Shown here: one piece after another, positions 1 to 16,193 of the stretch
Numbering within the stretch: position 1 is the first letter of the stretch
How the letters are laid out: every line of letters begins with the position of its first letter
NCBI GenBank assembly: GCA_001179505.1
Contig: CDMY01000836.1
Coordinates: 1 to 16,193 of the forward strand
From: Vitrella brassicaformis CCMP3155
Taxonomy: Eukaryota; Protista; Chromerida
Reading direction: 5' to 3'
Length of the DNA: 16,193 nt
The notes under the pieces: model-generated
What the model was told of the DNA's origin: nothing
Database searches by the model: none
What the model saw: only the letters and a program-made list of their open reading frames with translations
Translations under genes and position numbers: made by a program

Positions 1-250
1 ACGTAGAAGTGATCGCCAAACTTGTCCACCTCCCCGCCGCAGATGCATCGCTGCGAGACGGTTGCGTGCGGGAGGGCAATGCCGAGCCCATTTGCTTTCT
101 CCCTCGACTCGGGAACCCCCAGCGTTATGACCTAAGAGCAAAGCAAAGCAAAGCAACAGCGCATATGTAAAAGTGTGGGACCCGCTCAATTGCTCACTTC
201 GCTGCTTCTGTTGTGCTCGCTTGGCCCCGCTTTGGCGTCCCCGATCTCGG
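1..250 (-). CDS. Partial intron-containing gene with a CxC..D..GDH zinc-knuckle-like motif (resembles the CCHC region of restriction-like-endonuclease non-LTR retroelements); runs off the left edge
   Basis: Exon 250-198 (AEIGDAKAGPSEHNRSSE, donor GTGAGC) joins in phase 0 to exon 131-1 (VITLGVPESREKANGLGIALPHATVSQRCICGGEVDKFGDHFY; acceptor CTCTTAG after a (GCTTT)n tract). The gene structure is seen in the sequence; the family assignment is pattern recognition only. 5' exons are unresolved. Confidence 0.5.
138..156. repeat. (GCAAA)n microsatellite forming the polypyrimidine tract of a minus-strand intron
   Basis: gcaaagcaaagcaaagcaa read directly. Confidence 0.9.
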
Positions 251-358
251 CTGTTTGTGGGTGTTCACAAAGATCAGCCACTTAGGTTGGAACGCATGCA
301 GGCCGTCATGGGTCACCGCATCTGCACCACGAGCAGAAGCAATGAAGCTGCACGACGA

Positions 359-405
359 GCATCTGCTTGGACGGCATCTGCTCGGACGAGCATCTGCTTG
401 CACGA
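359..405. repeat. Degenerate 15-16 bp minisatellite, 3 copies (GCATCTGCTYGSACG[A])
   Basis: gcatctgcttggacg / gcatctgctcggacga / gcatctgcttgcacga, plus a weaker copy near 318. Confidence 0.8.
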
Positions 406-1134
406 GCTTGATGTAAATTTTGCGACCAATTCGTCGGTGTGTTGGTCGCAATTCCATCTACACCCGCCAGCACAGTGATTTGCAATGGTGGGGGGCGTTG
501 CATGGGATGGCATGGCATGCCTTGTCTTTCGGCAGCTCATATCCTGCCTCGGGTGTATAGTCGATGTGATGAGAGAGATGAGCTTTTGGGCTTTTCACTA
601 TGCTGGCATTATGTGTGTGGTCGCGTCCTTGAAGTGATGTATCTCTACTTGCATCCTCGTCGGCATGGAGCCGTCGGTTCACATGCCGGTGGCTGCGTGC
701 GGATGAGGCGGGGGAAGAGATCCGTCAGTGGGAGCATGAGTGGAGTGTGTGTGCGGTCCATACGGCAGCTGCCGCATGCCATGACCAGAGAGAAGGAAGG
801 TTGATCTGTTTCTGTCGGTGTGCTTCGTGGCGATTCGTCCTGCGCTTATGTTTCCAGTCTGGCAGGCCATCGACCACAAGGCGGCTCTGCATCGATGGCC
901 CTGGGGTTGGACACATCAGTGCAGTGGAGGATCTGCCTCACGCAATTGTGCCCTCTTGCTTAGACTGACAGATAGACGGACTGTGGACAGCTTCGCGATG
1001 AGCCGAGTGTGACATGACCTTTCAATGGCGTTGCCCGTGTCTGTTCGGCAGTCGATCGATCACTCACAAGGGTCGCCCTCACACATGGCATCAATCGAGG
1101 TGACGCTCCCTCACTGCTGGCCTGTCTATCGTGT

Positions 1135-2663
1135 TCAGGAGTGGAAGTGTTTCTTGTGCAGCCGCACCTGCTTGACCACCGGCCAGGCCGTCTTCTTGAT
1201 GTCCACACACACGACTGACCCTCAGGCGTCTGAAGCACCAGTAAAACAACCACACACAACCACACAGACATCCACGTCGATGACATCCGCGTGAGTGTGC
1301 ATATGTACCCTCGGGCAGGCGGTGAGCAGGGTCTTGACCTCCCGCTCGTCGATGGCGGCGTCGGTCAGCTGATGAGACAGCTCCTTGGCACTCAACTCCT
1401 CGCCACATCGATCCAACGCCTGACAGGGAGGGAGGCAGACATCAGGACTGCAGTTGTTGGGCTGTGTGTGGTGGCCAGCCTGCCTGTTCCAGTTGGGATG
1501 CGAAGGCAGCGGCGGCTTCGTCTCCGATGCTGTCCACCTCCTGTGCACGCACACTCTTCTCAAACGACAGCATCGAAGGGATCACAACTGCACGCCTCAC
1601 ACACAGAGAGGAATCAGATAAGTGGATGGATTGGTCATGTGTTGGCTGCGTGTCTGAGACGGACCGACAGCACGGGGGATGAAGTCTCCGTACGACACAC
1701 GGCCGTCGGGCTCCTGCAGGCACCCACACAGACACACGTGAGCCATCAATTGCCTGGCCATGCTGCATCTGTCTGCCTGACCAGTGTGGCCTCGGACATG
1801 ACGGTGTAGATCTGGAAGCGCGTGAGGCCGAGCTTGACCGAGTGGATGAGGTCGATCATGTCGTCAGGGTCCAGCATACCGCTCATCTGATCACAGACAG
1901 ACAGACAGACAGAGACACACGCATGGATTGAGACACACGCAGTACTTACCTCAGTGTCTCTCGATCGAACAAGTCCTTGAGGAACTGCGCCAGCTCATCC
2001 TGCTTCCTCTCATTCTCCAACAGACGCAACGTCGCTGCACGAGAGACAAAGACGAGAGGGATGGCAGGATTCTCCACACACATACACACATACGTCCCCT
2101 TACTCACCGAGCTTGTGCAGCATGTCGTAGGCGAACGGCACGAACTCTGAACCCCACGGCGAAAGAGAAGCGCCTTCACTTATGCACTTTTTGTGTCGGT
2201 ACCGTTGTAGTTGATGGTGCCGTCGTTGTCTTGGTCGACCACGTGGAACAACAGTGCGTTCAACTCACGACTGCACACAGACACAGGCACAAACAAGGCT
2301 ATCGATGCAGGCGGGCAAGAGAGACATGGAGATGACCGGTTCAGCCCGAGCTCCATGCTGCACATGGTGTCGATGAACTCACTCCTGCACACAAGGGGAG
2401 AGATGTACACATATTAAGAGACACAGCAGCCAACACGTATCAAGCGACGCTGACCTGGAAACGAATCCTTTGCCGTCCTTGTCAAACTCCTTGAACATCG
2501 TCATGATGGTCTCCGTCAACTCTTCCCTGTACGAGACACGCACACGGGCGAGCACAGAGACGCACACGTGCATCGTGGCACTGTCTGTCTGTCTGTCTGT
2601 CTACTTCGCCGTCATGCCCTGCACCAGAAACTCCTCGGCCTCCTTCTCAGCCACCTGCATCTC
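1135..2663 (-). CDS. Multi-EF-hand calcium-binding protein, apparently frameshifted twice; 5' end unresolved (possibly a pseudogene)
   Basis: Spliced peptide EMQVAEKEAEEFLVQGMTAKEELTETIMTMFKEFDKDGKGFVSRSEFIDTMCSMELGLNRRELNALLFHVVDQDNDGTINYNEFVPFAYDMLHKL... with canonical loops DKDGKGFVS and DQDNDGTIN and degenerate later loops. Intron phases agree except exon 2034-1950 (85 nt, needs 86) and last exon 1229-1135 (95 nt, needs 96). One GC-AG intron (1483-1420). Confidence 0.8.
1894..1912. repeat. (GACA)n intronic microsatellite
   Basis: cagacagacagacagacag in an EF-hand gene intron; similar (CTGT)n at about 2581-2600 and elsewhere. Confidence 0.85.
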
Positions 2664-3117
2664 CTGAAAACAACAAGCACAACCACCATACAGGGAACCA
2701 CCTGGAGCTCCCGACCGTCTCGCACTGCTCTTTCACCCACCCGTTCAGCCTCTATCCGCCAATGCATGGATGCATCCATCGATGCGTGGCTGCCTGCTGT
2801 AATTGAACGGCTGTCGCCCGCGCCTAGCTGCCTCGTACGTCCGCGGCCGTGGATAAAGCGACAGCACTGTCTGTCTTCCTTCTTGTCTATCGATGAGTTT
2901 AAGTAGATCCATGAAACGGGCGACGAAGTTCGTCTAAGCATCAGTTCGTATCAGCAGAAACAATGGACAACGCTCATTGACGGCGAAAACATGTCGCACA
3001 CTGCAAACAAGCGTGAGACATGCAACGTGACATACACATTCTGGACCCAGATCCAGCCAGCCACCTCACAGCCCCGCAGCGGGGCTGGTGTGTGGCCTTG
3101 TCTATCTCTCTGGGTGT

Positions 3118-4678
3118 CTATCTGGTCAGCCGAAAGCTGTTCGCCATCCGTCGCAGTTTGTCGCTCTCGGCAGCCCACTCGTCTTCCGGCGACACGACAG
3201 TGAGGGAAAACAGCTTGTCCCCTCGACACGCGATGACAGAAAGGTTGTTGTACTCGAATGGCTGGACAACCCCCCTGACGATGTACTCAAACAAATACAC
3301 CTCCCTGAAACATCGCACACAAGACACATCGGTGGGTCAGGTGAACGACCAGCAGCTGTCTCACTGACCCTCCTGGCTCTCTCTGTTCGCTGAGCGCATC
3401 AATCAGCATGGCGACTTTGCCTGAGCCCTCTGGCGCTATCGCCTCGCGCAACAGAGTCTCAGCCGCCTGCATTCATACATATATTACCATGACACAGGTG
3501 GCACACGCACACAAAACAGATGAGGTGTATTTGCCTGCTTTGGCGGCCCGAGGAGAGAAAAGAAGGCTCGGTCATCCGTCAGCCTTAAAGTGCTCTTCAC
3601 CACCGAGACGTTCTCCTGATACATCAGGGCAAACAGAGCACCTCCCGTCAATGTGTGACGTGTTATCCATCCATCCATCCATCCGTGTGCTGAATTCACC
3701 TTGGCGTCTCCTCCACCCCCGGGCGGTCCGAAGGCCACATCGGGTGCCTCGCTTTGTGCAGCAGCCCTCTTAACAGGCCGGCCCTCGTCAAATGATGCAG
3801 CCAATGGCCGCCGAGCGGCATCCTGAACAGTCAAACAACACCATAGTTGAGCAAACAGGTGTCTGTCCATCGATCCAGACAGTCGGCCTTTGCTGTACCT
3901 TTGCTGTGTACAGCGCGACGTCTGCTAGCCAATTTGATGGGTACAAGAACTCGTTCTTGTAGAGTCAAGTACCCATCAAATTGGCTGGAAATCGACACAG
4001 AGGGAGGGAACAAACAGACAACACAATGTCGCTCAGCGTAACCATCTTCAAGTAGTGGCTGACGTGTGCCGCTTCTCGTGTGTACCGGTGGGCAGGTCCC
4101 AGCCGGTACGAGTACCCATCCACTTCATTGACGTACCTGCACGCAGCAACAAGACGGCACTCACATGTACGGCGCATCCCTTGCCTCCCTTCTCGGTGTG
4201 CTGCTTGCCTTTTAAATCCATCAATGGGGTAGATCACATCAAGCCTGAGTTTTCTTGCCTGCTCAGGTGACAGCCGCAGAAGAGCCGAAGTAATGCCGAA
4301 CAGATTGGCACCAAGGGCAACTACCGCGGCGCCCTGTGAGGACGTCAAAGGGGGAATGAATGTAATCCAGCCACCCGCAACCGCCCACTTACCAGAAGCA
4401 CAAGAAAGCGGCGGCGGGGTGTGATGCTGTCAGGCTCTGCAGGCACAACACAGGATTCATAGATCTGATGAATGAAGATCTCGAGCAGCACCAATCTCCT
4501 GCAGCAGCCTGTCGTTTCTTCGTTGGCGCAGCTTGACGCTTCTTCTCATTGGCAGCAGGGGCTGCACAAACAGAGTGGATCTGAGGAATGACTCTCCTGC
4601 AGCACCAATCTCCTGCAGCAGCAGCCTGTAGTTTCTTCGTTGTCGCAGCTTGACGCTTCTTGTCATTGGCAGCAGGGG
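3118..4678 (-). CDS. PsbP-domain thylakoid lumen protein (PPD-type, resembles the PPD7/At3g05410-like group), interrupted by a 34-nt inverted insertion at an exon boundary
   Basis: Exons 4436-4393, 4333-4209, 4136-4110, 3950-3899, 3822-3700, 3615-3535, 3466-3369 and 3304-3118 are phase-consistent. They give ...PRRRFLVLLGAAVVALGANLFGITSALL...RLDVIYPIDGFKRYVNEVDGYSFLYPSNWLAD...AFGPPGGGGDAKENVSVV...LGPPKQAAETLLREAIAPEGSGK...YLFEYIV...LFSLTVVSPEDEWAAESDKLRRMANSFRL. A twin-Arg plus hydrophobic stretch suggests a Tat signal. N-terminal exons are duplicated (4678-4606, 4561-4492); start codon uncertain. Subfamily is from memory of homologues, not a search. Confidence 0.85.
3927..3986. repeat. Nested inverted repeat (fold-back): 18-bp outer arms, 9-bp inner arms, 2-nt loop
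   Basis: agccaatttgatgggtac (3927-3944) / gtacccatcaaattggct (3969-3986) perfect; tacaagaac (3942-3950) / gttcttgta (3953-3961) perfect. Confidence 0.97.
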
Positions 4679-4697
4679 CTGCACAAACAGAGCGGAT
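4485..4697. repeat. Tandem duplication, 114-bp period, about 1.9 copies, covering one exon plus flanking intron of the PsbP-like presequence
   Basis: Copies start at 4485 and 4599 (gcagcaccaatctcctgcagcagc...gctgcacaaacagag); they differ by a 3-nt GCA indel and a few substitutions. Confidence 0.95.
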
Positions 4698-4843
4698 GAC
4701 GGAGAAATACGCTGACGGCATGTCGCCGCCTCAGCAAGGCACGGCATAGGTGCCACGTGTGTTGGTTTGATGGAACAGCTGTCCCTAACACTCCGGCCCC
4801 GTCAGACGAATGTCTGTCTTTCTCCCCTCAGGATAGAGCAAAT

Positions 4844-7390
<2,547 letters not shown>

Positions 7391-8017
7391 GGGAATGTGT
7401 GACATGCCCCTTCTTCCTTTTTCCTGAGTCGAGAATTTTGGACCGGGCTAAGTAGCGATGATGTTATCAAAGTGGTGCAGTGTGCCTTGTGAGTGAGGTG
7501 GCGGTTTTGATCGCACCCCAACCTCAGCCTCACGGCTTGGTGACAGGGGGGCTTGTGAGAGGGAGGGTGGGTGCATCATCGATGGGAAGAATTGCTCGTA
7601 TGGCCGTCCGTCCGTCTGTGTGCGTGCTCGTTTCATCATCTGTCAGTGAGAGAAAGAAAGGAGAGGGCAGGTATGGCAATCGGCGATGTGGTTTGTGGCG
7701 TGTCTTGTGTGGCTGTGGCCATTTTGTCACCTGAGTGCGTGCGTGCATGCGCCTGTGTTTTTCGACTGAGTCGGTCACACTCAGTCTATGTCACAGAACA
7801 ATGCTGAGGCACTGGAAGTATATGTCATCATACCGGGTATGTCTTGTGTCCGCCCTGGCCCTTCATCCATAAGACACGGACTAACACAACCCAGATTATA
7901 AAACCCCAGATTGGCTAGGGTTCCAGCAAACCAAAAAGCGGCAAACGGAGAGCATCTCCTTCGTGTGCCTGCCGACTCCATCCATCCACCCATCCATCCC
8001 TCAAACGAAAGGCAGCG

Positions 8018-10282
8018 ATGAGCAAGCGGCATCAGCGCCGTCCGATGCTGAACATGGAGGAGTCCCTCAACCCCAAAGTGGACTCCTTCTCATGGGCCGT
8101 GTAAGAAAGCAAAGATGCAGTGCACAGAGGAGATCCAGGAATGAATGCATTGATCCATTTGTGTGGTGGGATGTGGTGTGTGTGTTGTGTTGGTCCCTGT
8201 TCAGGGATGCGCAAGGCAACCTGCAGCATCGTGACACCGGGGTCAAGCTGGGCAGGGAGGGCATCGAAGTCGAGGGAGAGGAATTTGCCGTCAGAAGAGA
8301 TGAACTAGAGGTGACAGACAACCACAACTGTCATGGATACTGCCGCATGAAGGATCTTTCTGTGTTGTGTTGTGTTGTGTTGTGCTGCGTGTCAGTTTGA
8401 CCCAAACAACGTGATAGGCCGGGGCGCCTCAGGTGCGGTGATCAAGGCCTTTCACAAGCCCAGGAACGAATGGGTGGCACTCAAGGTGACGACCAAACAA
8501 ACCAAGACCAGGTGCACGGCAGCAACGGCGTTTGGGTTTTGTGCAGGAGATCAAGATAGAGGACAGGGGGAAGCGCCACCAGCTGCTGGGAGACCTCAAG
8601 GTGGGGACGGACATAGAGCAACGGACCGCATGCATGTGTCTGTGTCTTCATGTGTATGCGCAACTCATGAATGTGGACACGTTGCTGAGTGCAGGGCATG
8701 GTGCAGGCCAAGGGGTGTCAGTTCCTGGTCGAGTTCATCGGCGCATACATCGAAAGGGCATGTAAGAGTAGTCGGCATACGACTCGCACCATGGCTGTTC
8801 TTATCGCCACACGCAAACGTGTTTGTATGCTTGGTTGGTTGGTTGTTGGTTGCTCGGTGCAGCGTCGGTGCATTTGGTGATGGAGTTCATGGATCGCGGG
8901 AGCATCTTCGATCTCATCCGACACTGCAAGAAGCGCAACATCAGCATACCCAGCCAAGTGCTCGCCGCTATCATACACCAGGCATGCAGACACACATCCG
9001 TCCATCTCTCCATCTGTGCACCCAATTCCTTCGTGGATTCATTTCTTCTCTGTTCGTCTGTCTGTGCGGATCCATTGTTGGGCTGCAGGTGTTGGTGGGT
9101 CTGCAGTTTCTGCACCAGAAGGCCATAATCCACCGCGACATCAAACCCCAAAACATACTTGCCAACTCCAAAGGTCAGTCACTGACTGACCGACACACAG
9201 CATAGACTCGTTATTCACAGTGTGCCTGTGGTTACATCCCTTCCCTTTGACCTGTCTGGCTGCAGGTTTCATCAAGGTGTCAGATTTCGGCATCGCCAAG
9301 TCCGTCACGAGCATGAACAACACCTTCGTCGGCACTTCCATATACATGTATGTATGTATGTACCCGTAGCTGCACACATGTACACACCCATTCACATACA
9401 TAATCAGTCCATCAAGGCGATCGCACAATGCGTGTGGGGTGGGGCTGTGGTGTCTGGTGCAGGAGTCCCGAGCGGGTGCTGGGTCAGGCGTATGACGTGT
9501 CGGCGGACATATGGTCGATGGGCATGGTCTTCTACGAACTCATCACAAAGGCAAGACAGACACACAGGCACACAGACAGACACGTTATCGAGCGGAAGAA
9601 GCACGATGCGCATATCAACGACATGAGTCAAGAGCTGTGTTGACTTCTTCTCAGGACCCTCCCATTCAGAACCAGAACAACTTCACGGAGCTGTTTGATG
9701 TGCTCATCAACAAACCGGGTACACAGCACAGCGCTCTACAGCAGTGGCAGACATGTCATTCATTCATGGTGTCCTTGGCTCTCTTTCACTCATTCGCTTA
9801 TACGTCCAGAGCCCCGTTTGTCGGCAGCGTACGACCAGGGCCTGCGGGATTTGGTCGAGGGATGGTACGTGTGGATGTTTACGTGCATGCGTACACACAA
9901 GGGGTCCTGATGTGTGCACAATGTGTTCGTGCAGTCTTCAGCGCGACCCCAGTAGGCGAGCATCCGTTGATGACCTCCTGGTAGGCACACACACAAACAG
10001 CCAGATAGACAGACACGACAGACAGACACGAATGGGTGGGGTGCATGAGTGCCAACGTCAATGTGCTGCTGTGCTTGGGTGATCCGCCCGTCCTTCAGAA
10101 ACACCCGTTCCTGAGTGGCGGGCCGAATGTCGATATCGTCAGACAGTAAGCGAGAACAAACCTACCTACACGCGACCGAGAAACATCGTCTCGCATGTGC
10201 CTGTCTGTCTGTCTGTCTGCCTCTCCCACTGTGGGCCTATGTGTGCGTGTGTAGGTTCTTTGAGTATGCATACAGCGCTTAG
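8018..10282 (+). CDS. MAP kinase kinase (STE7/MAP2K family), about 337 aa, intact
   Basis: 14 exons (8018-8100, 8205-8310, 8396-8485, 8547-8600, 8695-8761, 8863-8981, 9089-9173, 9266-9347, 9463-9550, 9655-9718, 9810-9864, 9935-9980, 10099-10145, 10255-10282), total 1014 nt in frame. N-terminal basic/hydrophobic docking-like motif KRHQRRPMLNM, GRGASG, VALK, HRDIKPQN, DFGIAKSVTSMNNTFVGTSIYMSPER, DIWSMG. Two GC donors (8982, 9551). Confidence 0.92.
8361..8384. repeat. (TGTGT)n intronic microsatellite
   Basis: tgtgttgtgttgtgttgtgttgtg directly upstream of the exon 3 acceptor of the kinase. Confidence 0.85.
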
Positions 10283-11544
10283 GAGACACACAAACATTGC
10301 AAAGGAGCAGCGGTCTTTCCATCCATGAGTGATGCGTACGTAGTGCACATACGTGTACGTGTACGTGTGTACAGACAGACAGGTTGCCGACTGTTTGGCG
10401 TATTGTGTCAGTTGTGCATCCATATGGTAGAATCTCTCCGCGTGTCCATCTGTGCTTTTATGTGTCCGTCTGTGGGTGTCGAGCTGTCGTGTTGATTCTG
10501 CACAGTGACGCGACACAAACGCTACGACGCACAATACGGACTCGTGCATGTATACAAGCATCTGAATGGCACAAAGGCACGCCCCGTGTCCAAAAGCTCG
10601 TGCCGTCCTTGACCGAGCCGTCTGCAAAACCTCCCAAACACACCAAAAAGAGAAAAGGTAGAAGGGTGAAAAGAACACCAGAAACTAGATGGAGAAATTT
10701 TAGAGATACATCTCGAACAGGCGGACAGACAGACAGACAAAGCCGGCAGACACAACTCTTCATTCATCCATCCATCAATCAGCCACTACACATGTACACA
10801 CACATTTGACCTCCTTCCTCTCCCTCCCCTTTCCCCCTTCAATTCTCCCGACTCCCGAGTGTCTCAGTGGTATGCGGGCGAAAACCGGAGGGACGGTCCT
10901 TAACAGTAAGCAAAAGAAAGTTAAGCCAGGTGAGTGAGACAGTCCATCGCTAGCTGAGCGGACATGCAGAGAGAATAGAGCGAGAAGCAGGGGTCTTGCA
11001 TGCAAAGCTCCGACTGCATTGCACGTCGCCAAACTCATACAGACAGATCCGATGCCTTCGTGCCGCTAAACGAATGAGTCGTGAGGGCAGAATTCCCTCA
11101 AAGCCACGCGTCCGTATGTATCAGCCTGTCAGGGTCTACGTACCGCAGGACAAACATGTTCATATAGGCACTGTTAGGCAGCCCCGTGCAGTACACATAC
11201 GCTACCGGCAAATGCCATGCCCAGCAGTCGCATCCTTACCGCATTGGGCTCGCTCTCACGTAACACATCTCTTTTCCTTGTGCTGCTGTCGGTGCCCCAT
11301 TTCGATGAGCACAAGGACCGCGAGGCCCGCGACCCTCTCCGCCAGGCGCTCGCCAGATGGATCAAACATCTGCATCACAAACACATACATGTACTCGGGT
11401 GGGGTGGATACATCGATGCACCGCACCCACTAACACCATGCGGAAGTAGGACTTGATAGTGTCGACTGTCTTGCGCTCTTTGTTTGGCGGCCCCACTCGC
11501 CCAGCACACTCACCAGGTAGTGGATGCTCAAGTGCTGACACATC

Positions 11545-11603
11545 AGACAGACAGACGACAGACAGGCAGACAGAAAGACAGGCAGGCAGGCAGGCAGGCA
11601 GGC
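11545..11603. repeat. Compound (GACA)n/(GGCA)n intronic microsatellite
   Basis: cagacagacagacgacagacaggcagacagaaagacaggcaggcaggcaggcaggcaggc. Confidence 0.85.
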
Positions 11604-12208
11604 TGACAGAGACATGGCAACGATGGCGAGAAGGAGAGGAGCTTGCCTGGAACTCCTCTCCCGGGTTGAAGTACGGGGGGCCGATTTGTCGAGGCCCGAG
11701 CAGCTGTAGTCTGTCAGCTTGGACACAAAGACGAGAACAGCTGCACAAAGAGACAGCAGCGACACAGCCCCTAATTCCCCCTCCCCCACCCACTTCATTG
11801 CATTGCATGCATGTCCTTCTCCCTACCTGTAGGGCCCTGCTCGTGTCGTCCATCTCGTGGTTCTGCTTAGTGTCCCACTCCCCCATCACACCTGGGCGAT
11901 GTAGAACCTCCCGTCGTGCTCGTCATAACACAGGCAGTAGGTCTTGGGGTGCGTCGTCCTGGTCGACGCCAGCACACAGATCCTGCCCTTGGCGAGTCCG
12001 TCGGCGATTTGTGAGGCCAGGAGCTTGCGGAAGGTGACTTTGAGGAAGGTGCTGGTGCTGGCCGATGGTGATGGTCTGAATGCGGTTGTACCCACCGGCC
12101 ACCTGAAACAAGTATGAGAGACAAAGCACGGAGGCCCCATGTGTTCGTACGCCAACCTACCGGTGAGCTTAATGCCGTGGGGGAAAGCTGAAGGCGTTGC
12201 GTCGCGTT

Positions 12209-12245
12209 GCTCTTCCGGGCTCAAACCCGGAAGAGCCCGGAAGAG
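12209..12245. repeat. Nested inverted repeat with tandemly duplicated arm
   Basis: ctcttccgggctc (12210-12222) / gagcccggaagag (12233-12245) perfect 13 bp; cccggaagag occurs twice in tandem (12226-12235, 12236-12245). Confidence 0.95.
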
Positions 12246-12903
12246 AGGTCCGTAAGGAGAGTGGTATCGCGTTCTCTGGGGCGATCACTGATTGAGCGAG
12301 TCGCGAAGCGGCAAAGGCCGTGATGGACACTGACGGCCAGCAGCAGCAGCAGGCCACGGCATGCCACACCGCACACAGCATAGATCTGGAGGCCTTCGCA
12401 CAGCGCTGCGGCCAAATCGTAATACTTGATGCACCAGACAAACCACTGGCACGCACACATCCTCATTGTTTCCTCTCTCTGCGTGGTGTGGCGGTATGAC
12501 ATCAGCTGGAGGGGAGGTGAGGAAGATGCGCTGACTCTCAAACCACTCGACACCTGACGAAGGACGACAGGTGCGTGCGGTTTGGCTACCAGTGCCGATG
12601 GTGTGTGTTGGGCTGTATGTTTGCCTGTCAGGTCGGGCCATCAATTGATGCGTAGAATGAGTTGCAGAGGGGACGATGTGGGGGTACCACGACGGCGGGA
12701 TGCTCTCATGTGTGGGCGCTGTGGGGTGGACTAAGTAAGCTGCATCGCTCGTGGATAAATGCCTGTGCTGGACTTGTACAGACACACATGAGGACCGAAC
12801 GTTGAGCTCCCTACGTATCAGCCCCCCAACATATGCAGCGACACGTGCGTCCAGACCAACCACACACCACTCATACCGTCTTTCTGGCTGTCTCACAATC
12901 TGT

Positions 12904-13612
12904 CTATCGGACAAGGTCTTCCCCGCTCTCAATCATGGGCTGCCCCATCCCCTCCAGTCGCTTCTTCTCCCTCTCCCTCGCCTCAGCCAGCAGCTCCTTA
13001 TCGAGCCCCATGGTGCGGTAATACTCGTGCATGGTCATCTTCTTGGCCATCGCCACCCACGACCGCATGCTTGAGCCACTCGCCCACATTATACTTGGCC
13101 ACCTTGCCGGCGCGGGACAGCTGGTACTGCCAGTCGGGCTGCATCAACACGGCCTCATCGGGACCTGGACGCACTCTAACACACACAGATGGAGAGAGAG
13201 AGACCAACATTCCTTGGTAAGCTCCGACTGTGTGTCTGTTGTCCTAGTCCGTGTGTGTGTGTACCTCATGGCATAGACGAAGCCAAGATTGAAGATGGGC
13301 ACGACTTGAAGAGGGGTGATTGACATCCCCCCGGCACCAGACACTTGAAGGCAGCCACACGGTTCGCCAGGCTGTCGGGCCGCCTGATCTGGTAGGTAAT
13401 GTCCGCATAGAGAGGAACCGATTCATCCGCAGGAGGCACCGGGCGCCCCATGCAGTGAGCACAACGCCAGTGCCGATGTAGATGGAGGGCGCCACATACT
13501 CGTGCTGGATGGCCCGTAGCAGGCCCTGGATGTTGCGCCGGATGACGTGCCTGTCAGTGGTCTCCCCAGGCCGCTGCGGCGGCTCCACCAGCATCGATGC
13601 GTCGCTCTCCAT
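12904..13612 (-). CDS. Hypothetical protein (about 195 aa) with two hydrophobic stretches; +1 frame discontinuity in the last exon
   Basis: Exons 13612-13345, 13304-13265, a 23-nt micro-exon 13227-13205, and 13164-12904: MESDASMLVEPP...YVAPSIYIGTGVVLTAWGARCLL...WLPSIVPIFNLGFVYAMSRSLPRNVGPDEAVLMQPDWQYQLSRAGKVAKYNVGEWLKHA // WVAMAKKMTMHEYYRTMGLDKELLAEAREREKKRLEGM...VR*. The last exon is 1 nt too long for its phase. Confidence 0.65.
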
Positions 13613-13621
13613 CGCCCAGAA

Positions 13622-15002
13622 ATTCGGGACTCAGCAAAGCTACGAGCGAGGCACGCTCTTGCCCAAAGTTCGTGTTCTGTCCGTAATTGGGGCCGAGCGA
13701 GACTTTGTCTGACAGACCCACGAAACCAATCGAGGTGAGGACGCAAACAAGGGTTTCGTGTGTGTCGTCTAAATGTTGTGTGGTGTTGACGTGTGTGTCG
13801 CATTTTATGGTGCAGAACACGGGGTTTCGCAACGACCTGTTGAGGTGTCCTTCTGCCTCGTGTGTTTTGGGAGCGTGCGCCCCACCCGCGATCCAAGCCG
13901 ATGACGCAGATGCCCTACTTTCCTCTTCGCCCCCGAGACCTTCTGGACGTCCACCGAGGCCCACCCAGCAAAGGAAATGGGATTTCTTTCACACTCCACT
14001 TGCCGGATGACTTGGTAGCCCAGCTCTCCCGTCTCCCAGCCGGCAAACTATCAGCTCCACCACCGGCGTCGTCTCACGAGAATGCCTGGCCGCCTCTCGA
14101 TGGTGCGTGCACCAGCTGGACCGGAATTGCAGAATCTGCGATAAGTTCATCCCATTTCAGTGGAATTCGAGCTAGAAGCCAACCGATGGCAGTTGGATAG
14201 CCGAGACAAGCTCGTTGTCGACGCAAGAGAGGAGGTCAGTGACGACGGATCCCCTGAAGGTTGATTTTTTTCGTGTCTGCATATTGCAGTTCTCGAGAAG
14301 TCTTGACGTGTTGGAACGGTGTGAGGCACAGTGTCGCCGACACAAGCAAAATCGAGATGAATGGTCTGCTGTGCTACGCAAGGGCGGAAACACAGATGCC
14401 AAGTGTGGCTTGTTTGTCGCTGCAATATGGAGTTTATATCCTCTTCTTGACGCATTGGAGAAGATGGCACAATCGTCTGATGCCTCGAAGCCTCCAAACG
14501 GTCGAGTGTCTCAGGGGAATGAGCGACTGGAAGCCATCCTACAGGCGCTTGAGAGTGCACAGGGTCGAGATACAACGAGAGACACGCAGCGAAAACATGA
14601 TGTCGATCAGAGGTATTCAGATTATAAATGAGTCATGACGAGAGCAACTTTGTTCTTGCTTTCCTCAGCCATCGGGCATGGACGGCTCCACACACGCCCA
14701 CGCCCACGCGTCAGGTCAAGCATACCAACAGCCCGCCCAATCGCATCCGCGTCACAATATCGACAGGCCATCACACGCCCAGTGAGCCCGCCAGCCCGCA
14801 GCGACACGAGGCTGGACAGCGATTGTCGCCACCCCGCAATAGGGTCAGGAGGTTGGCGTCGTTCGGATCCAACGCCGCAGCGAGCAGGACAAGGTGGATG
14901 TTTGTCTGTATTTATTTGTTGGTCTGCAGATTCGACTGTGCGGGAAAAACAAAGGACCGCCGGCTCGTGCATGACGAGTACACGGACTTTCAGTCCATCT
15001 GA
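13622..15002 (+). CDS. Hypothetical Pro/Ser-rich protein, at least 8 exons, one +1 frameshift near 14298; start codon unresolved
   Basis: Exons ...-13667, 13716-13752, 13816-13844, 13898-14102, 14161-14259, 14290-14612, 14669-14893 and 14930-15002 with GT-AG introns and matching phases at all seven junctions. Exon 14290-14612 is 1 nt too long (VLEK // LDVLERCEAQ...). No family recognised. Confidence 0.55.
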
Positions 15003-15338
15003 CGCCGTTTCCATTGTTTCTCGTCATCATGTGCGTGTCGAATTATCTGTACATACAACTGACATGCAAGTGATGGCGATCAATAGGTCGTCACGGCTCA
15101 TGCGATTTGCATGGAAAAAACTTAAGGATCATGGCCAAAACATCCACCAGGCGAATCGCTCAAAAGCAGGACCGTTGTGGGGTCCAGCGTCTCGCTATGC
15201 TGGATCCCTGCATTGAGAGAGGCACGTCTGCCTGTGTTCTGTCTCGATGCACTGCATGTCGGTGCACGTGGCTGCCTGACCTGATGACATAAAAAGATCA
15301 TCAATTAATGTACATACATTTTGTTACAAGTCTAATGA

Positions 15339-15946
15339 CTAACCGTCCTCTTCTGGCAACTCCTCCTCTCTTTTCCCCTTCTTGCTTGCCCTCGTACGCA
15401 TAGCCCTCGTACGCATAGCCACCCCCTCACCAACCTCCCTGGCCTGTTCTTCCACCGCCTGAGCGGCGAGCTCCGACGAAGGCACCTCATCCCGTGCCCA
15501 TTCTCTATACTCAACAGCCATCTGAATAGCCCTATCTACATCATCTCTGTCAGCAGACAACACTCAGTCTCGGAATCTCTTGTCGAATGTGTGGTCACCG
15601 TGCACGAGCTGACATCGAACGTACACCCTGCTGACTTCTGGCTGACTTGGGGATCATGTCCATCTCTCCTGAGTCCAACAGACAAGTGCTTCCTGTCAGG
15701 CCAGCCTTCCTCGTCTTGAGGGGGCAAAAAGTCCAGACGCGTGTGCACCGCCGCCTTCGCCTCTTCGGACCCTCCCGGCTGGCGAACGTGTAATCTGACA
15801 TGTCCGTGCCGTCCCAACCGATGCGCCTACGTGTCTGGTCCCTCCAAACAGTGGCCTCACGAATGGCATCCTTGACGCCCTCCTCGGTGGCCGAGAGGAT
15901 GCGGAAGTAACGTCGTTGGCCGACATGGAGATCCATCTGGCGCAGT
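15339..15946 (-). pseudogene. ApiAP2-type transcription factor with two AP2-like domains, disrupted by frameshifts and an in-frame stop
   Basis: Domain 1: GQRRYFRILSATEEGVKDAIREATVWRD. Domain 2: VYVRCQLVHGDHTFDKRFR[D*]VLSADRDDVDRAIQMAVEYREWAR. Both match the AP2 beta3/alpha-helix pattern (R.F....A...A..WR/YR). The segments lie in three different frames. Acceptor at 15946; upstream exons not resolved. Confidence 0.7.
15388..15420. repeat. 15-bp perfect tandem duplication (encodes AMRTR AMRTR in the AP2 tail)
   Basis: gccctcgtacgcata x2 plus gcc. Confidence 0.95.
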
Positions 15947-16115
15947 CTGATGACAAAAATCAATTTCCTCATGACTGCATGTTGCATCTCTCGAGCTGCT
16001 CCTGACGGTTTGGAAGAATTTTCTTGATGACTGCACGACGGTTTTCGATACTGCCTGACTGACGTCGGCAATGTAAACGAATCGCCAACACTCGGCAATG
16101 ACGAGGTCTCTGCAG

Positions 16116-16193
16116 ATGGAGTGGGACTACGTCTTTCGCGTCGTGCTCACCGACGAGTGCGCTCTCAGCCCCCTCCGCGAGGCCATCGCCAAG
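16116..16193 (+). CDS. Start or internal exon of a gene running off the right edge (MEWDYVFRVVLTDECALSPLREAIAK)
   Basis: Follows the acceptor-like TCTCTGCAG; 26 open, GC3-rich codons up to the window end; product unknown. Confidence 0.55.
   Translation, partial: MEWDYVFRVVLTDECALSPLREAIAK

What the first reader, a model, noticed from the sequence alone, without database searches (positions are those of the whole stretch)
3927..3986. 34-nt fold-back insertion placed exactly between a splice acceptor and its exon
Seen: conserved-looking GYS|FLYPSNWLAD needs the exon to start at 3950, but the intron's TTCCAG ends at 3985. The intervening 34 nt (3984-3951) are an inverted copy of the exon's first about 24 nt with a 10-nt internal addition (filler plus a duplicated TAC). 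The hairpin centre sits on the exon boundary. The upstream exon has GATGGGTACT (4120-4111), identical to part of the insert, which could be a microhomology for template switching. Splicing at TTCCAG gives a +1 frameshift; no AG gives the correct phase. Established: hairpin-opened transposon excision and polymerase-theta end joining leave templated inverted insertions. Inference: a captured repair event that inactivates or re-wires a photosystem-associated gene. The alternative is a non-canonical GT-GA splice or structure-guided skipping that removes it.
Basis: partly seen in the sequence, partly recalled or inferred. Interest (0 to 1): 0.75.

Follow-up and report, generated by a model that had tools for sequence, protein, structure and literature searches.

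The report
Borrowed intron botched into PsbP gene
In one of two recently duplicated PsbP-like photosynthesis genes of the alga Vitrella, a 159-base patch was pasted into an exon: a copy of another gene's intron, with bits of that gene's exons, flanked by fold-back copies. It looks like an intron gain by sloppy DNA repair that went wrong, because ordinary splicing would leave the gene out of frame.

Summary
The hairpin is real: 18/18 plus 9/9 complementary bases at 3986-3927, RNA dG -35.7 kcal/mol, z -9.5. The window is contig C836 of Vitrella brassicaformis CCMP3155.

A 90%-identical paralog on C413 (CEM11308.1, transcript-supported) has this exon uninterrupted (DGYEFLYPSNW). So do ten distant homologues. 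The whole 159 nt at 4111-3953 is therefore one insertion, "intron" and acceptor included, and no target bases were lost.

The core, 4102-3984, copies the last 17 nt of an exon plus the full intron of an unrelated gene on C393 (CEM09129.1; 108/115 aligned bases identical). Only these two copies exist in the genome. Both junctions carry inverted copies: 7 nt at the 5' side, 18+9 nt of exon 3b at the 3' side.

Best reading: a compound templated insertion made by error-prone break repair or template switching, in effect an imperfect intron gain.

Splicing at the captured sites leaves +58 or +34 nt, a +1 frameshift, and a stop at 3790-3788. The public gene model (CEM34869.1) avoids this by skipping the conserved exon 3b. 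Low dN/dS (0.09) leaves open that some in-frame isoform still works.

No RNA data could be reached. This exact locus was not reported before in the scan.

The parts
4112..4136 (-). Exon 3a of the PsbP-like gene. It encodes (R)YVNEVDGY and ends at TAC.
   Evidence: Colinear with the paralog's exon (L002 1500-1523) and with CEM34869.1 / CEM11308.1.
3953..4111 (-). The whole 159-nt insertion, absent from the paralog. The boundary is ambiguous by 2 nt (AC).
   Evidence: blastn and MAFFT against C413 give one 159-nt gap with no loss of target bases. Ten homologues have a contiguous Y-[ET]-[FYL]-x-x-[PM]-x-x-W here.
4103..4111 (-). 5' junction: TC followed by GTACCGG. GTACCGG is an inverted copy of CCGGTAC at 4088-4082. 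Together with TGGG/CCCA it forms an 11-bp hairpin.
   Evidence: the repeat finder I3; the MFE fold pairs these arms.
4086..4102 (-). Copy of the last 17 nt of an exon of the donor gene (C393, CEM09129.1; there it encodes ..VWGLLT).
   Evidence: Alignment to L004 1501-1517. The donor protein junction ...NWPLTVWGLLT|AWVLTAAFF fixes the donor's exon end.
3985..4085 (-). Copy of the donor gene's complete intron (101 nt here, 106 nt in the donor). It keeps its own GTACAC donor, its pyrimidine tract and its CAG acceptor.
   Evidence: 108/115 aligned bases identical, with 4 slippage-type indels. There are only two copies in the 72.7-Mb genome. The donor junction is transcript-supported (MMETSP Transcript_16678).
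3969..3986 (-). Outer fold-back arm, an inverted copy of exon 3b bases 3944-3927. It overlaps the donor copy by AGC and includes the acceptor AG.
   Evidence: 18/18 complementary.
3962..3968 (-). 7-nt filler TTGACTC, the bulge in the hairpin. TTGAC may come from the donor gene's downstream exon (ATGGGT-GTTGAC there, ATGGGTACTTGAC here).
   Evidence: Local alignment score reached by 79 of 5000 shuffles. This is suggestive only.
3953..3961 (-). Inner fold-back arm TACAAGAAC, an inverted copy of 3950-3942.
   Evidence: 9/9 complementary, with 2 nt between the arms.
3965..3967 (-). TGA stop in the ancestral reading frame, inside the retained part of the insert.
   Evidence: ORF 3965..4348 ends here. 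Every in-frame retention of 3984-3953 meets this stop.
3899..3952 (-). Exon 3b, encoding EFLYPSNWLADVALYTAK. It is the conserved N-terminal strand region of the PsbP domain, and its first 24 nt were the template for the fold-back.
   Evidence: Identical peptide in the paralog, with 5 synonymous and 0 non-synonymous differences. The paralog's uninterrupted exon matches Pfam PsbP positions 6-23.
3788..3790 (-). Predicted premature stop in exon 4 if the captured intron is spliced at AG 3985 from donor 4085 or donor 4109 (+1 frame).
   Evidence: Exon-wise frame translations. This is inference; no RNA data were available.
4062..4063 (-). GT donor used by the public gene model CEM34869.1. That model reads 16 codons of the insert (SYRLGPAHRYTREAAH) and then skips exon 3b to join exon 4 at 3822.
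   Evidence: Sequence of P0028 and its comparison with P0001.

Best explanation
The feature is a single compound templated insertion of 159 nt in exon 3 of one of two young PsbP-like paralogs of Vitrella brassicaformis.

Proposed sequence of events:

1. A break or stalled fork occurred between codons TAC and GAG.
2. It was repaired by synthesis that switched templates several times.
3. One template was an ectopic locus, the gene for CEM09129.1 on C393. This contributed 17 nt of its exon, its whole intron, and probably about 13 nt of its next exon.
4. The other templates were the nascent or flanking strand itself, which gave an inverted 7-nt copy at the 5' junction and an inverted 18+9-nt copy of exon 3b at the 3' junction.
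5. The switches occurred at short microhomologies: AGC, and ATGGGT/ACCCAT.

Because the captured piece carries a working intron in sense orientation, the event is in effect an intron gain by DNA repair. It is imperfect, though. The captured splice sites (GT 4085 or the new GT 4109, to AG 3985) remove only 101 or 125 of the 159 nt. That leaves +58 or +34 nt, a +1 frameshift, and a stop in exon 4. The hairpin also buries the acceptor AG in an 18-bp stem.

Shown: the insertion, its donor, the empty site, the fold-backs and the frame arithmetic. Inferred: the repair pathway, that the captured intron is spliced, and that the gene copy is inactivated or reduced to aberrant isoforms.
For: - Empty site: the C413 paralog (90% identical over exons and introns) has GGGTAT|GAGTTT uninterrupted. 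Its product CEM11308.1 is in a transcriptome.
- Homologues: ten homologues have no insertion at this position. The uninterrupted exon matches Pfam PsbP positions 6-23.
- Donor: 4102-3984 aligns to C393 (L004 1501-1624) with 108/115 identical. The donor protein junction shows that 17 of those nt are exon in the donor. This rules out a precise, lariat-derived copy of the intron.
- Copy number: only 2 copies in the genome.
- Fold-backs at both junctions.
- AGC overlap, and the ATGGGT..TTGAC resemblance to the donor's next exon.
- Frame analysis.
- The annotated product drops the conserved W and D of the motif.
- No transcript-derived protein of the window copy is in the database, whereas the paralog and the donor gene both have one.
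- The known category 'intron gain during DSB repair' is reviewed in PMC3443670.
Against: - The exons of the window copy look selected. For exons 3-7 against the paralog, dN/dS is 0.09, and exon 3b has 5 synonymous and 0 non-synonymous differences. This is hard to square with a long-dead gene if the insert is as old as its 6% divergence from the donor suggests.
- That conflict can be eased by gene conversion, since there are identical runs of 89 and 81 nt, matched by only 14 of 2000 shuffles. It can also be eased by low-fidelity synthesis at the time of insertion, or by an unassembled closer donor. It is not resolved.
- No RNA evidence could be obtained on how the region is spliced.
- Raw reads could not be checked.
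- The repair enzyme is unknown. No Pol theta-like best hit appeared among the four family-A polymerase loci examined.
Confidence: 0.72

Rival explanations
1. The insert is tolerated because some in-frame isoform is made, and the gene copy is still functional. One candidate is the annotated isoform (donor 4063 to exon 4, skipping exon 3b). Another is donor 4063 to AG 3950, in which the hairpin hides AG 3985 and AG 3956 in stems and exposes AG 3951-3950 in its apical loop. That second isoform would keep FLYPSNW and add 15 residues.
For: - dN/dS is 0.09 across exons 3-7, and exon 3b differs only synonymously from the paralog.
- Phase-0 donors combined with AG 3950 or AG 3956 are in frame and free of stops.
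- The hairpin is very stable and includes the acceptor AG.
- GTCAG-type donors are used elsewhere in this gene (exon 6 donor GTCAGT).
Against: - AG 3950 has no pyrimidine tract of its own.
- The annotated isoform deletes the conserved W and D of the first PsbP strand.
- No transcript-derived protein of this copy is in the database.
- Patchy identity suggests that gene conversion could mimic constraint.
Confidence: 0.15
2. This is a genuine non-canonical intron of exactly 159 nt, removed precisely (for example the reader's GT-GA, or AC..AC boundaries), perhaps guided by structure. It would be comparable to the repeat-bounded non-canonical introns of Amoebophrya.
For: - The length is a multiple of 3.
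- There is a 2-nt direct repeat (AC) at the boundaries.
- The exons look constrained.
- Non-canonical introns with inverted and direct repeats exist in a related lineage (PMC7789003).
Against: - There is no inverted repeat between the two ends of the 159-nt unit. Both hairpins are local.
- The direct repeat is only 2 nt, against 3-5 nt in Amoebophrya.
- All other introns of this gene and of the donor gene are GT/GC-AG.
- The insert contains a complete canonical intron that would compete for splicing.
Confidence: 0.05
3. This is an assembly or library artefact: a fold-back chimera incorporated into the consensus of a small, repeat-rich contig.
For: - C836 is a 16-kb contig made of segments that each have 78-91% identical copies elsewhere, and it ends in a multicopy repeat.
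- The reads could not be inspected.
Against: - Both flanks continue colinearly with the paralog.
- The insert is a structured mosaic with a diverged copy of another locus (6% substitutions plus indels), not a read-level inversion.
- An 18-nt inverted repeat is shorter than usual assembly k-mers, so it would not by itself mislead an assembler (my own knowledge).
Confidence: 0.06
4. This is a mobile-element event: an introner or MITE insertion, or a footprint left by hairpin-forming transposon excision.
For: - The sequence is shared between two introns in unrelated genes.
- A different 200-nt multicopy repeat did insert just 3' of this gene's stop codon.
Against: - There are only two copies.
- There are no terminal inverted repeats, and no target-site duplication beyond AC.
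- The copy includes donor exon sequence.
- An excision footprint does not explain 119 nt of ectopic DNA.
Confidence: 0.02

Closest known systems
[quoted passage not shown]
   Same: New intervening sequence at a previously continuous exon position. The sequence is derived from elsewhere in the genome. The junctions show short homologies and added nucleotides. The empty site is preserved in a close relative, here a paralog.
   Different: The donor is identifiable, and it is itself an intron with its exon edges. Both junctions carry inverted (snap-back) rather than direct repeats. The result is not a clean intron, since 34-58 nt stay in the mRNA frame-shifted. Splicing has not been shown.
Templated insertions of alternative end joining (polymerase-theta-mediated / synthesis-dependent MMEJ), and template-switch models such as FoSTeS/MMBIR and quasi-palindrome correction
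   Same: A mosaic of short stretches copied in direct or inverted orientation from the flanks and from an ectopic template, joined at microhomologies of 2-6 nt, with little or no loss of target sequence.
   Different: This is a natural germline event in an alveolate alga. The enzyme is unknown, and no Pol theta-like gene was recognised among the four polymerase loci checked. The ectopic piece, at 119 nt, is long for typical snap-back insertions (my own knowledge).
Intron transposition by reverse splicing, and introner / introner-like elements (Micromonas, Aureococcus, fungi, dinoflagellates)
   Same: Two introns in unrelated genes share sequence. The new one sits in sense orientation and brings its own splice signals.
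   Different: The copy is not seamless. It includes 17 nt of the donor's upstream exon and extra junction DNA. Only two copies exist, with no defined element ends, no TSD and no TIR.
PsbP family (PF01789), PsbP-domain lumenal proteins
   Same: The host gene has a twin-arginine signal (TPRRRFLVLL), the DGYEFLYPSNW strand and a C-terminal PsbP match.
   Different: This copy carries the 159-nt insertion, a 117-nt tandem duplication in the presequence, and two derived changes at conserved positions (H to N, T to S).

Membership tests
PsbP family (Pfam PF01789) | Significant match to the PsbP profile | tested here: met
   Exon 7 gives E 1.6e-08 (35.2 bits, cut-off 23.5) over profile positions 99-154. 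The paralog's uninterrupted exon 3 matches profile positions 6-23 at E 1.1e-03. Database products carry PF01789.
Intron gain by DSB repair / templated insertion | Empty target site preserved in a close homologue, with no loss of coding sequence | tested here: met
   The C413 paralog has one 159-nt gap, with codons colinear on both sides.
Intron gain by DSB repair / templated insertion | Inserted DNA traceable to templates (ectopic and/or flanking, direct or inverted), joined at microhomologies | tested here: met
   Ectopic donor on C393, 108/115 identical. Inverted copies of 18+9 nt and of 7 nt. AGC overlap at the switch. About 9 nt (TC, TTGACTC) are not securely assigned.
Intron gain by DSB repair / templated insertion | The new sequence is actually spliced out as an intron | not testable with these tools
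No transcript-derived protein of this copy is in the database.
Polymerase-theta-mediated end joining specifically | Presence and involvement of a Pol theta orthologue | tested here: inconclusive
   Six family-A polymerase loci were found. The four examined best match Pol I or PREX. Two were not examined. Involvement in the event cannot be tested from sequence.
Introner / introner-like elements | A family of many near-identical introns | tested here: not met
   Only C836 and C393, by blast-type search and by two pattern searches allowing 3 mismatches.
Introner / introner-like elements | Defined element ends (TIR and TSD for DNA-transposon introners), or seamless insertion | tested here: not met
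   No TIR, only a 2-nt AC repeat, and extra junction DNA.
Intron transposition by reverse splicing | The copy corresponds exactly to the excised intron | tested here: not met
   The copy starts 17 nt inside the donor's upstream exon. The donor junction is fixed by CEM09129.1, which is transcript-supported.
hAT-type excision footprint | Retained target-site duplication with short palindromic additions and nothing else | tested here: not met
   No duplicated target sequence. 119 nt of ectopic DNA are present.
Amoebophrya-type non-canonical introns (PMC7789003) | 8-20 nt inverted repeat between the 5' and 3' ends of the same intron, plus a 3-5 nt direct repeat over the boundaries | tested here: not met
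   Both hairpins are local to one end of the insert. The direct repeat is 2 nt.

The most novel reading that the evidence does not exclude
The fold-back is not just a scar but now acts in RNA. By locking the captured acceptor AG (3986-3985) and AG 3956 into an 18+9-bp hairpin and presenting AG 3951-3950 in its loop, it would redirect 3' splice-site choice so that an in-frame mRNA keeping FLYPSNW is made. Under this reading, a structure-rescued nascent intron explains why the copy still looks selected (dN/dS 0.09).
Probability: 0.08. Interest if true: 0.8.

Novelty: new member of a known kind. Interest (0 to 1): 0.5.

Why it matters
How new spliceosomal introns arise is an old open question, and few gains have a traceable mechanism. 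The 2012 review read here lists only 5 events attributed to break repair and 14 to intron transposition (PMC3443670).

This locus has all the pieces in one genome:
- the recipient,
- the empty site, in a 90% identical paralog,
- the donor intron in a transcript-supported gene,
- junctions that record template switching.

It shows that an intron can be moved at the DNA level, or from unspliced RNA, together with exon edges, rather than by reverse splicing. It also shows how such an event can fail, through leftover bases and a frameshift.

A single RT-PCR would tell whether the captured intron is spliced in its new host. For annotation, it flags CEM34869.1 as a model that lacks the conserved first strand of the PsbP domain.

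Tried and rejected
- **Multicopy introner.** Rejected: only 2 copies were found.
- **BLAST's 83% identity to the C393 copy as a sign of great age.** Corrected: with gaps placed properly, substitution identity is 93.9%.
- **Intron loss in the paralog.** Rejected: the insert contains donor exon sequence and fold-backs of the recipient exon, and the homologues are contiguous here.
- **Transcript evidence.** The search with the paralog protein (159-505 aa range) found only the two genome-derived Vitrella proteins. A protein-guided scan and an exact-pattern scan of metagenome contigs found nothing.
- **A third paralog to polarise changes.** None exists.
- **Pfam on the donor gene.** No family was found.
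- **Pol theta search.** Inconclusive.
- **Micro-exon or tiny-intron schemes inside the 34 nt.** I worked these through by hand, and all are out of frame.
- **Searching with a joined spliced model.** All searches were exon by exon, by reference or with database proteins. The only joining was the in-script frame enumeration over the 237-nt exon-3 stretch.

Full report
**Where we are.** The window is the whole contig C836 of a 72.7-Mb, 1064-contig assembly. Database names identify it as Vitrella brassicaformis CCMP3155. The finding lies in a PsbP-like gene on the minus strand. Exon 7 matches Pfam PsbP at E 1.6e-08. The public product is CEM34869.1 (P0028, 328 aa). I located the exons by reading the sequence and translating each exon on its own:
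- exon 2: 4333-4209
- exon 3a: 4136-4112
- exon 3b: 3952-3899
- exon 4: 3822-3700
- exon 5: 3615-3535
- exon 6: 3466-3369
- exon 7: 3304-3118

On the minus strand TTCCAG ends at 3985. It is followed by CCAATTTGATGGGTAC TTGACTC TACAAGAAC GA and then GTTCTTGTACCCATCAAATTGG. The repeat finder reports arms 3927-3944 / 3969-3986 (18 nt, perfect) and 3942-3950 / 3953-3961 (9 nt, perfect). This is the longest local inverted repeat in the window. As RNA it folds at -35.7 kcal/mol, against -12.4 +/- 2.5 for shuffles (z -9.5). GATGGGTACT occurs both at the end of exon 3a and inside the insert. That repeat follows from the fact that DGY (GATGGGTAC) is the reverse complement of part of YPS (GTACCCATC).

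**The key new fact is an empty site.** A search of the genome found a paralog on C413 that is about 90% identical across exons and introns (1311 matches and 143 mismatches). In the paralog exon 3 is continuous...GAT GGG TAT GAG TTT TTG TAC CCA TCC... = DGYEFLYPS. Its product CEM11308.1 (P0001) is also present in an MMETSP transcriptome. The alignment has a single 159-nt gap opposite window 4111-3953, which can equally be written 4113-3955 because of an AC ambiguity. Nothing is missing from the target. Ten homologues at 32-37% identity all have a contiguous Y-[ET]-[FYL]-x-x-[PM]-x-x-W-x-x-D here. The ancestral junction is therefore Y|E (TAC|GAG), the GAG codon is intact at 3952-3950, and the whole "intron" is part of the extra DNA. 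No third copy of the gene exists.

**Where the insert came from.** Its core, 4102-3984, matches one other place in the genome, C393:41287-41410. Two pattern searches allowing three mismatches found no further copies. With gaps placed properly, 108 of 115 aligned bases are identical, and there are four small indels in TGTTGTCTGTT / CCCTCC tracts. The earlier 83% figure counted gap columns.

The C393 locus encodes CEM09129.1 (P0079, 491 aa), which is also in MMETSP. Its sequence ...AFDDNWPLTVWGLLT|AWVLTAAFFLLALW... fixes the donor intron as GTACACACG...ATATCCAG, 106 nt. It follows that the window insert copies:
- the last 17 nt of the donor's upstream exon (4102-4086),
- the complete intron (4085-3985, 101 nt here), with its GTACAC donor, pyrimidine tract and CAG acceptor,
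- and the first C of the next exon.

A little further on, ATGGGTACTTGAC (3976-3964) resembles the donor's next exon, ATGGGT-GTTGAC. That alignment score is reached by 79 of 5000 shuffles. This is suggestive only, but it would explain the TTGAC "filler".

**Both junctions are fold-backs.**
- At the 3' side, the 18-nt arm overlaps the end of the donor copy by AGC. The acceptor AG can therefore be assigned either to the donor intron or to the inverted copy of exon 3b, which is a microhomology junction.
- At the 5' side, after TAC come TC and then GTACCGG (4109-4103). GTACCGG is the exact inverted copy of CCGGTAC (4088-4082) inside the captured piece. With TGGG/CCCA it forms an 11-bp hairpin. One of the seven substitutions relative to the donor (T to C, creating CCCA) improves that palindrome.

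There are no terminal inverted repeats of the 159-nt unit and no target duplication beyond AC.

**Mechanism.** The anatomy is one compound templated insertion: an ectopic template plus inverted copies of adjacent sequence, joined at short homologies, with the target preserved. This is the signature of synthesis-dependent microhomology-mediated end joining, or of replication template switching. That statement rests on established knowledge of those pathways. The reviews retrieved describe the corresponding "intron gain during DSBR" category.

Reverse-splicing transposition is excluded by the co-copied exon bases. An introner or MITE origin is excluded by copy number and by the ends.

I could not tie the event to polymerase theta. 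The genome has six family-A polymerase loci. The four I checked best match Pol I or the plastid PREX enzyme.

**Consequence for the gene.** I worked frames out exon by exon and by a script that enumerated donor/acceptor pairs within the 237-nt exon-3 stretch.
- The captured intron's own sites (4085-3985) leave 58 extra nt.
- Both give a +1 frame that runs into TGA at 3790-3788 in exon 4.
- Keeping the ancestral frame through the leftover bases hits TGA at 3967-3965.

In-frame, stop-free products need a phase-0 donor (for example 4063, CAC|GTCAGC) together with AG 3950, AG 3956 or the exon 4 acceptor. The public model CEM34869.1 uses donor 4063 and the exon 4 acceptor. It reads SYRLGPAHRYTREAAH from the insert and skips exon 3b, so it loses the conserved W and D of the first PsbP strand.

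The paralog and the donor gene both have transcript-derived proteins in the database. The window copy has none, of any length from 70 to 505 aa. This is weak evidence for low expression or decay of its mRNA.

**What does not fit neatly.** Against the paralog, exons 3-7 have dS 0.207, dN 0.019 and omega 0.09. Exon 3b has five synonymous and no non-synonymous differences. If the insert were as old as its 6% divergence from the donor suggests and had killed the gene, many more replacement changes would be expected. There are four possible ways out:
- An in-frame isoform keeps the gene useful (rival 1).
- Gene conversion from C413 has occurred. The identity is patchy, with identical runs of 89 and 81 nt, and the longest run is reached in only 14 of 2000 shuffles.
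- Part of the divergence arose during low-fidelity synthesis.
- A closer donor exists but was not assembled.

The perfect fold-back arms (0 mismatches in 27 pairs) are compatible with a young event, but they do not prove one. About 1.6 mismatches would be expected at 6% divergence. Two of the window copy's replacements (H to N in ..EYHNLS.., T to S in ..LFTLTV..) hit positions conserved in homologues, which hints at some relaxation of constraint.

**What could not be done.**
- No RNA-seq or raw reads were reachable.
- Two metagenome scans were empty.
Searches used single exons by reference or proteins returned by the databases.

**Verdict.** The interpretation as a repair scar is right in kind but too narrow. 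The scar is one end of a 159-nt insertion that imported another gene's intron. The result is an imperfect intron gain, with donor, recipient and empty site all visible in one genome. It is a new, unusually well-documented member of a known kind of event. How it is spliced, and whether the gene copy is dead, is undecided.

Noticed in passing
window 4462-4697: A 117-nt tandem duplication (2.0 copies, 89% matches) in the presequence-coding part of the window gene. It adds 39 residues (a repeat of STLFVQPLLPMxRSVKLRQRRNxRLLQEI) that the C413 paralog lacks.
   Followed up: partly
window 2898-3098: A repeat of about 200 nt inserted about 20 nt after the stop codon of the PsbP-like gene and absent from the C413 paralog. 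At least 15 other contigs carry copies at 80-84% identity (194-nt gap). It is probably a small non-autonomous mobile element.
   Followed up: no
window 1-16193 (whole contig C836): The contig is a patchwork of segments that each have a 78-91% identical copy on a different contig: 464-2753 on C395, 2759-4788 on C413, 11433-12491 on C633, and 12484-13623 on C1036. The switch from C395-like to C413-like sequence falls within 6 nt (2753/2759). The last 105 nt (16089-16193) are 98-99% identical to at least 9 other loci.
   Followed up: no
window 3533-3534 and 4207-4208: GC-AG introns. The exon 2 donor is GCAAGC in both paralogs. The exon 5 donor is GCAAAT in the window copy but GTGGGT in the C413 copy. 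The public model uses both GC donors.
   Followed up: no
window 3985-4085; L004 1518-1623: The captured intron and its donor are AC-rich near the 5' end (GTACACACGAG...) and GT-rich before the acceptor (..CTCTGTGTCG). These halves pair in the predicted fold. This matches the polarised-intron pattern that other first readers noted elsewhere in this genome.
   Followed up: no
L004 1-1275 (C393 about 39787-41060): A run of N followed by a G homopolymer lies inside the donor gene, just upstream of the exon that was partly copied. A JGI-derived 499-aa variant (P0080) of the donor protein exists on a 2.7-kb contig.
   Followed up: no
G000 C236, C562, C305, C335, C613, C850: There are six family-A DNA polymerase loci. 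C562 best matches the apicoplast PREX polymerase. C236, C305 and C335 best match bacterial-type Pol I. None of these four best matches Pol theta.
   Followed up: partly
window 12210-12245: A perfect 13-nt inverted repeat (CTCTTCCGGGCTC / GAGCCCGGAAGAG) with a 10-nt spacer. It is the second-best local hairpin in the window.
   Followed up: no
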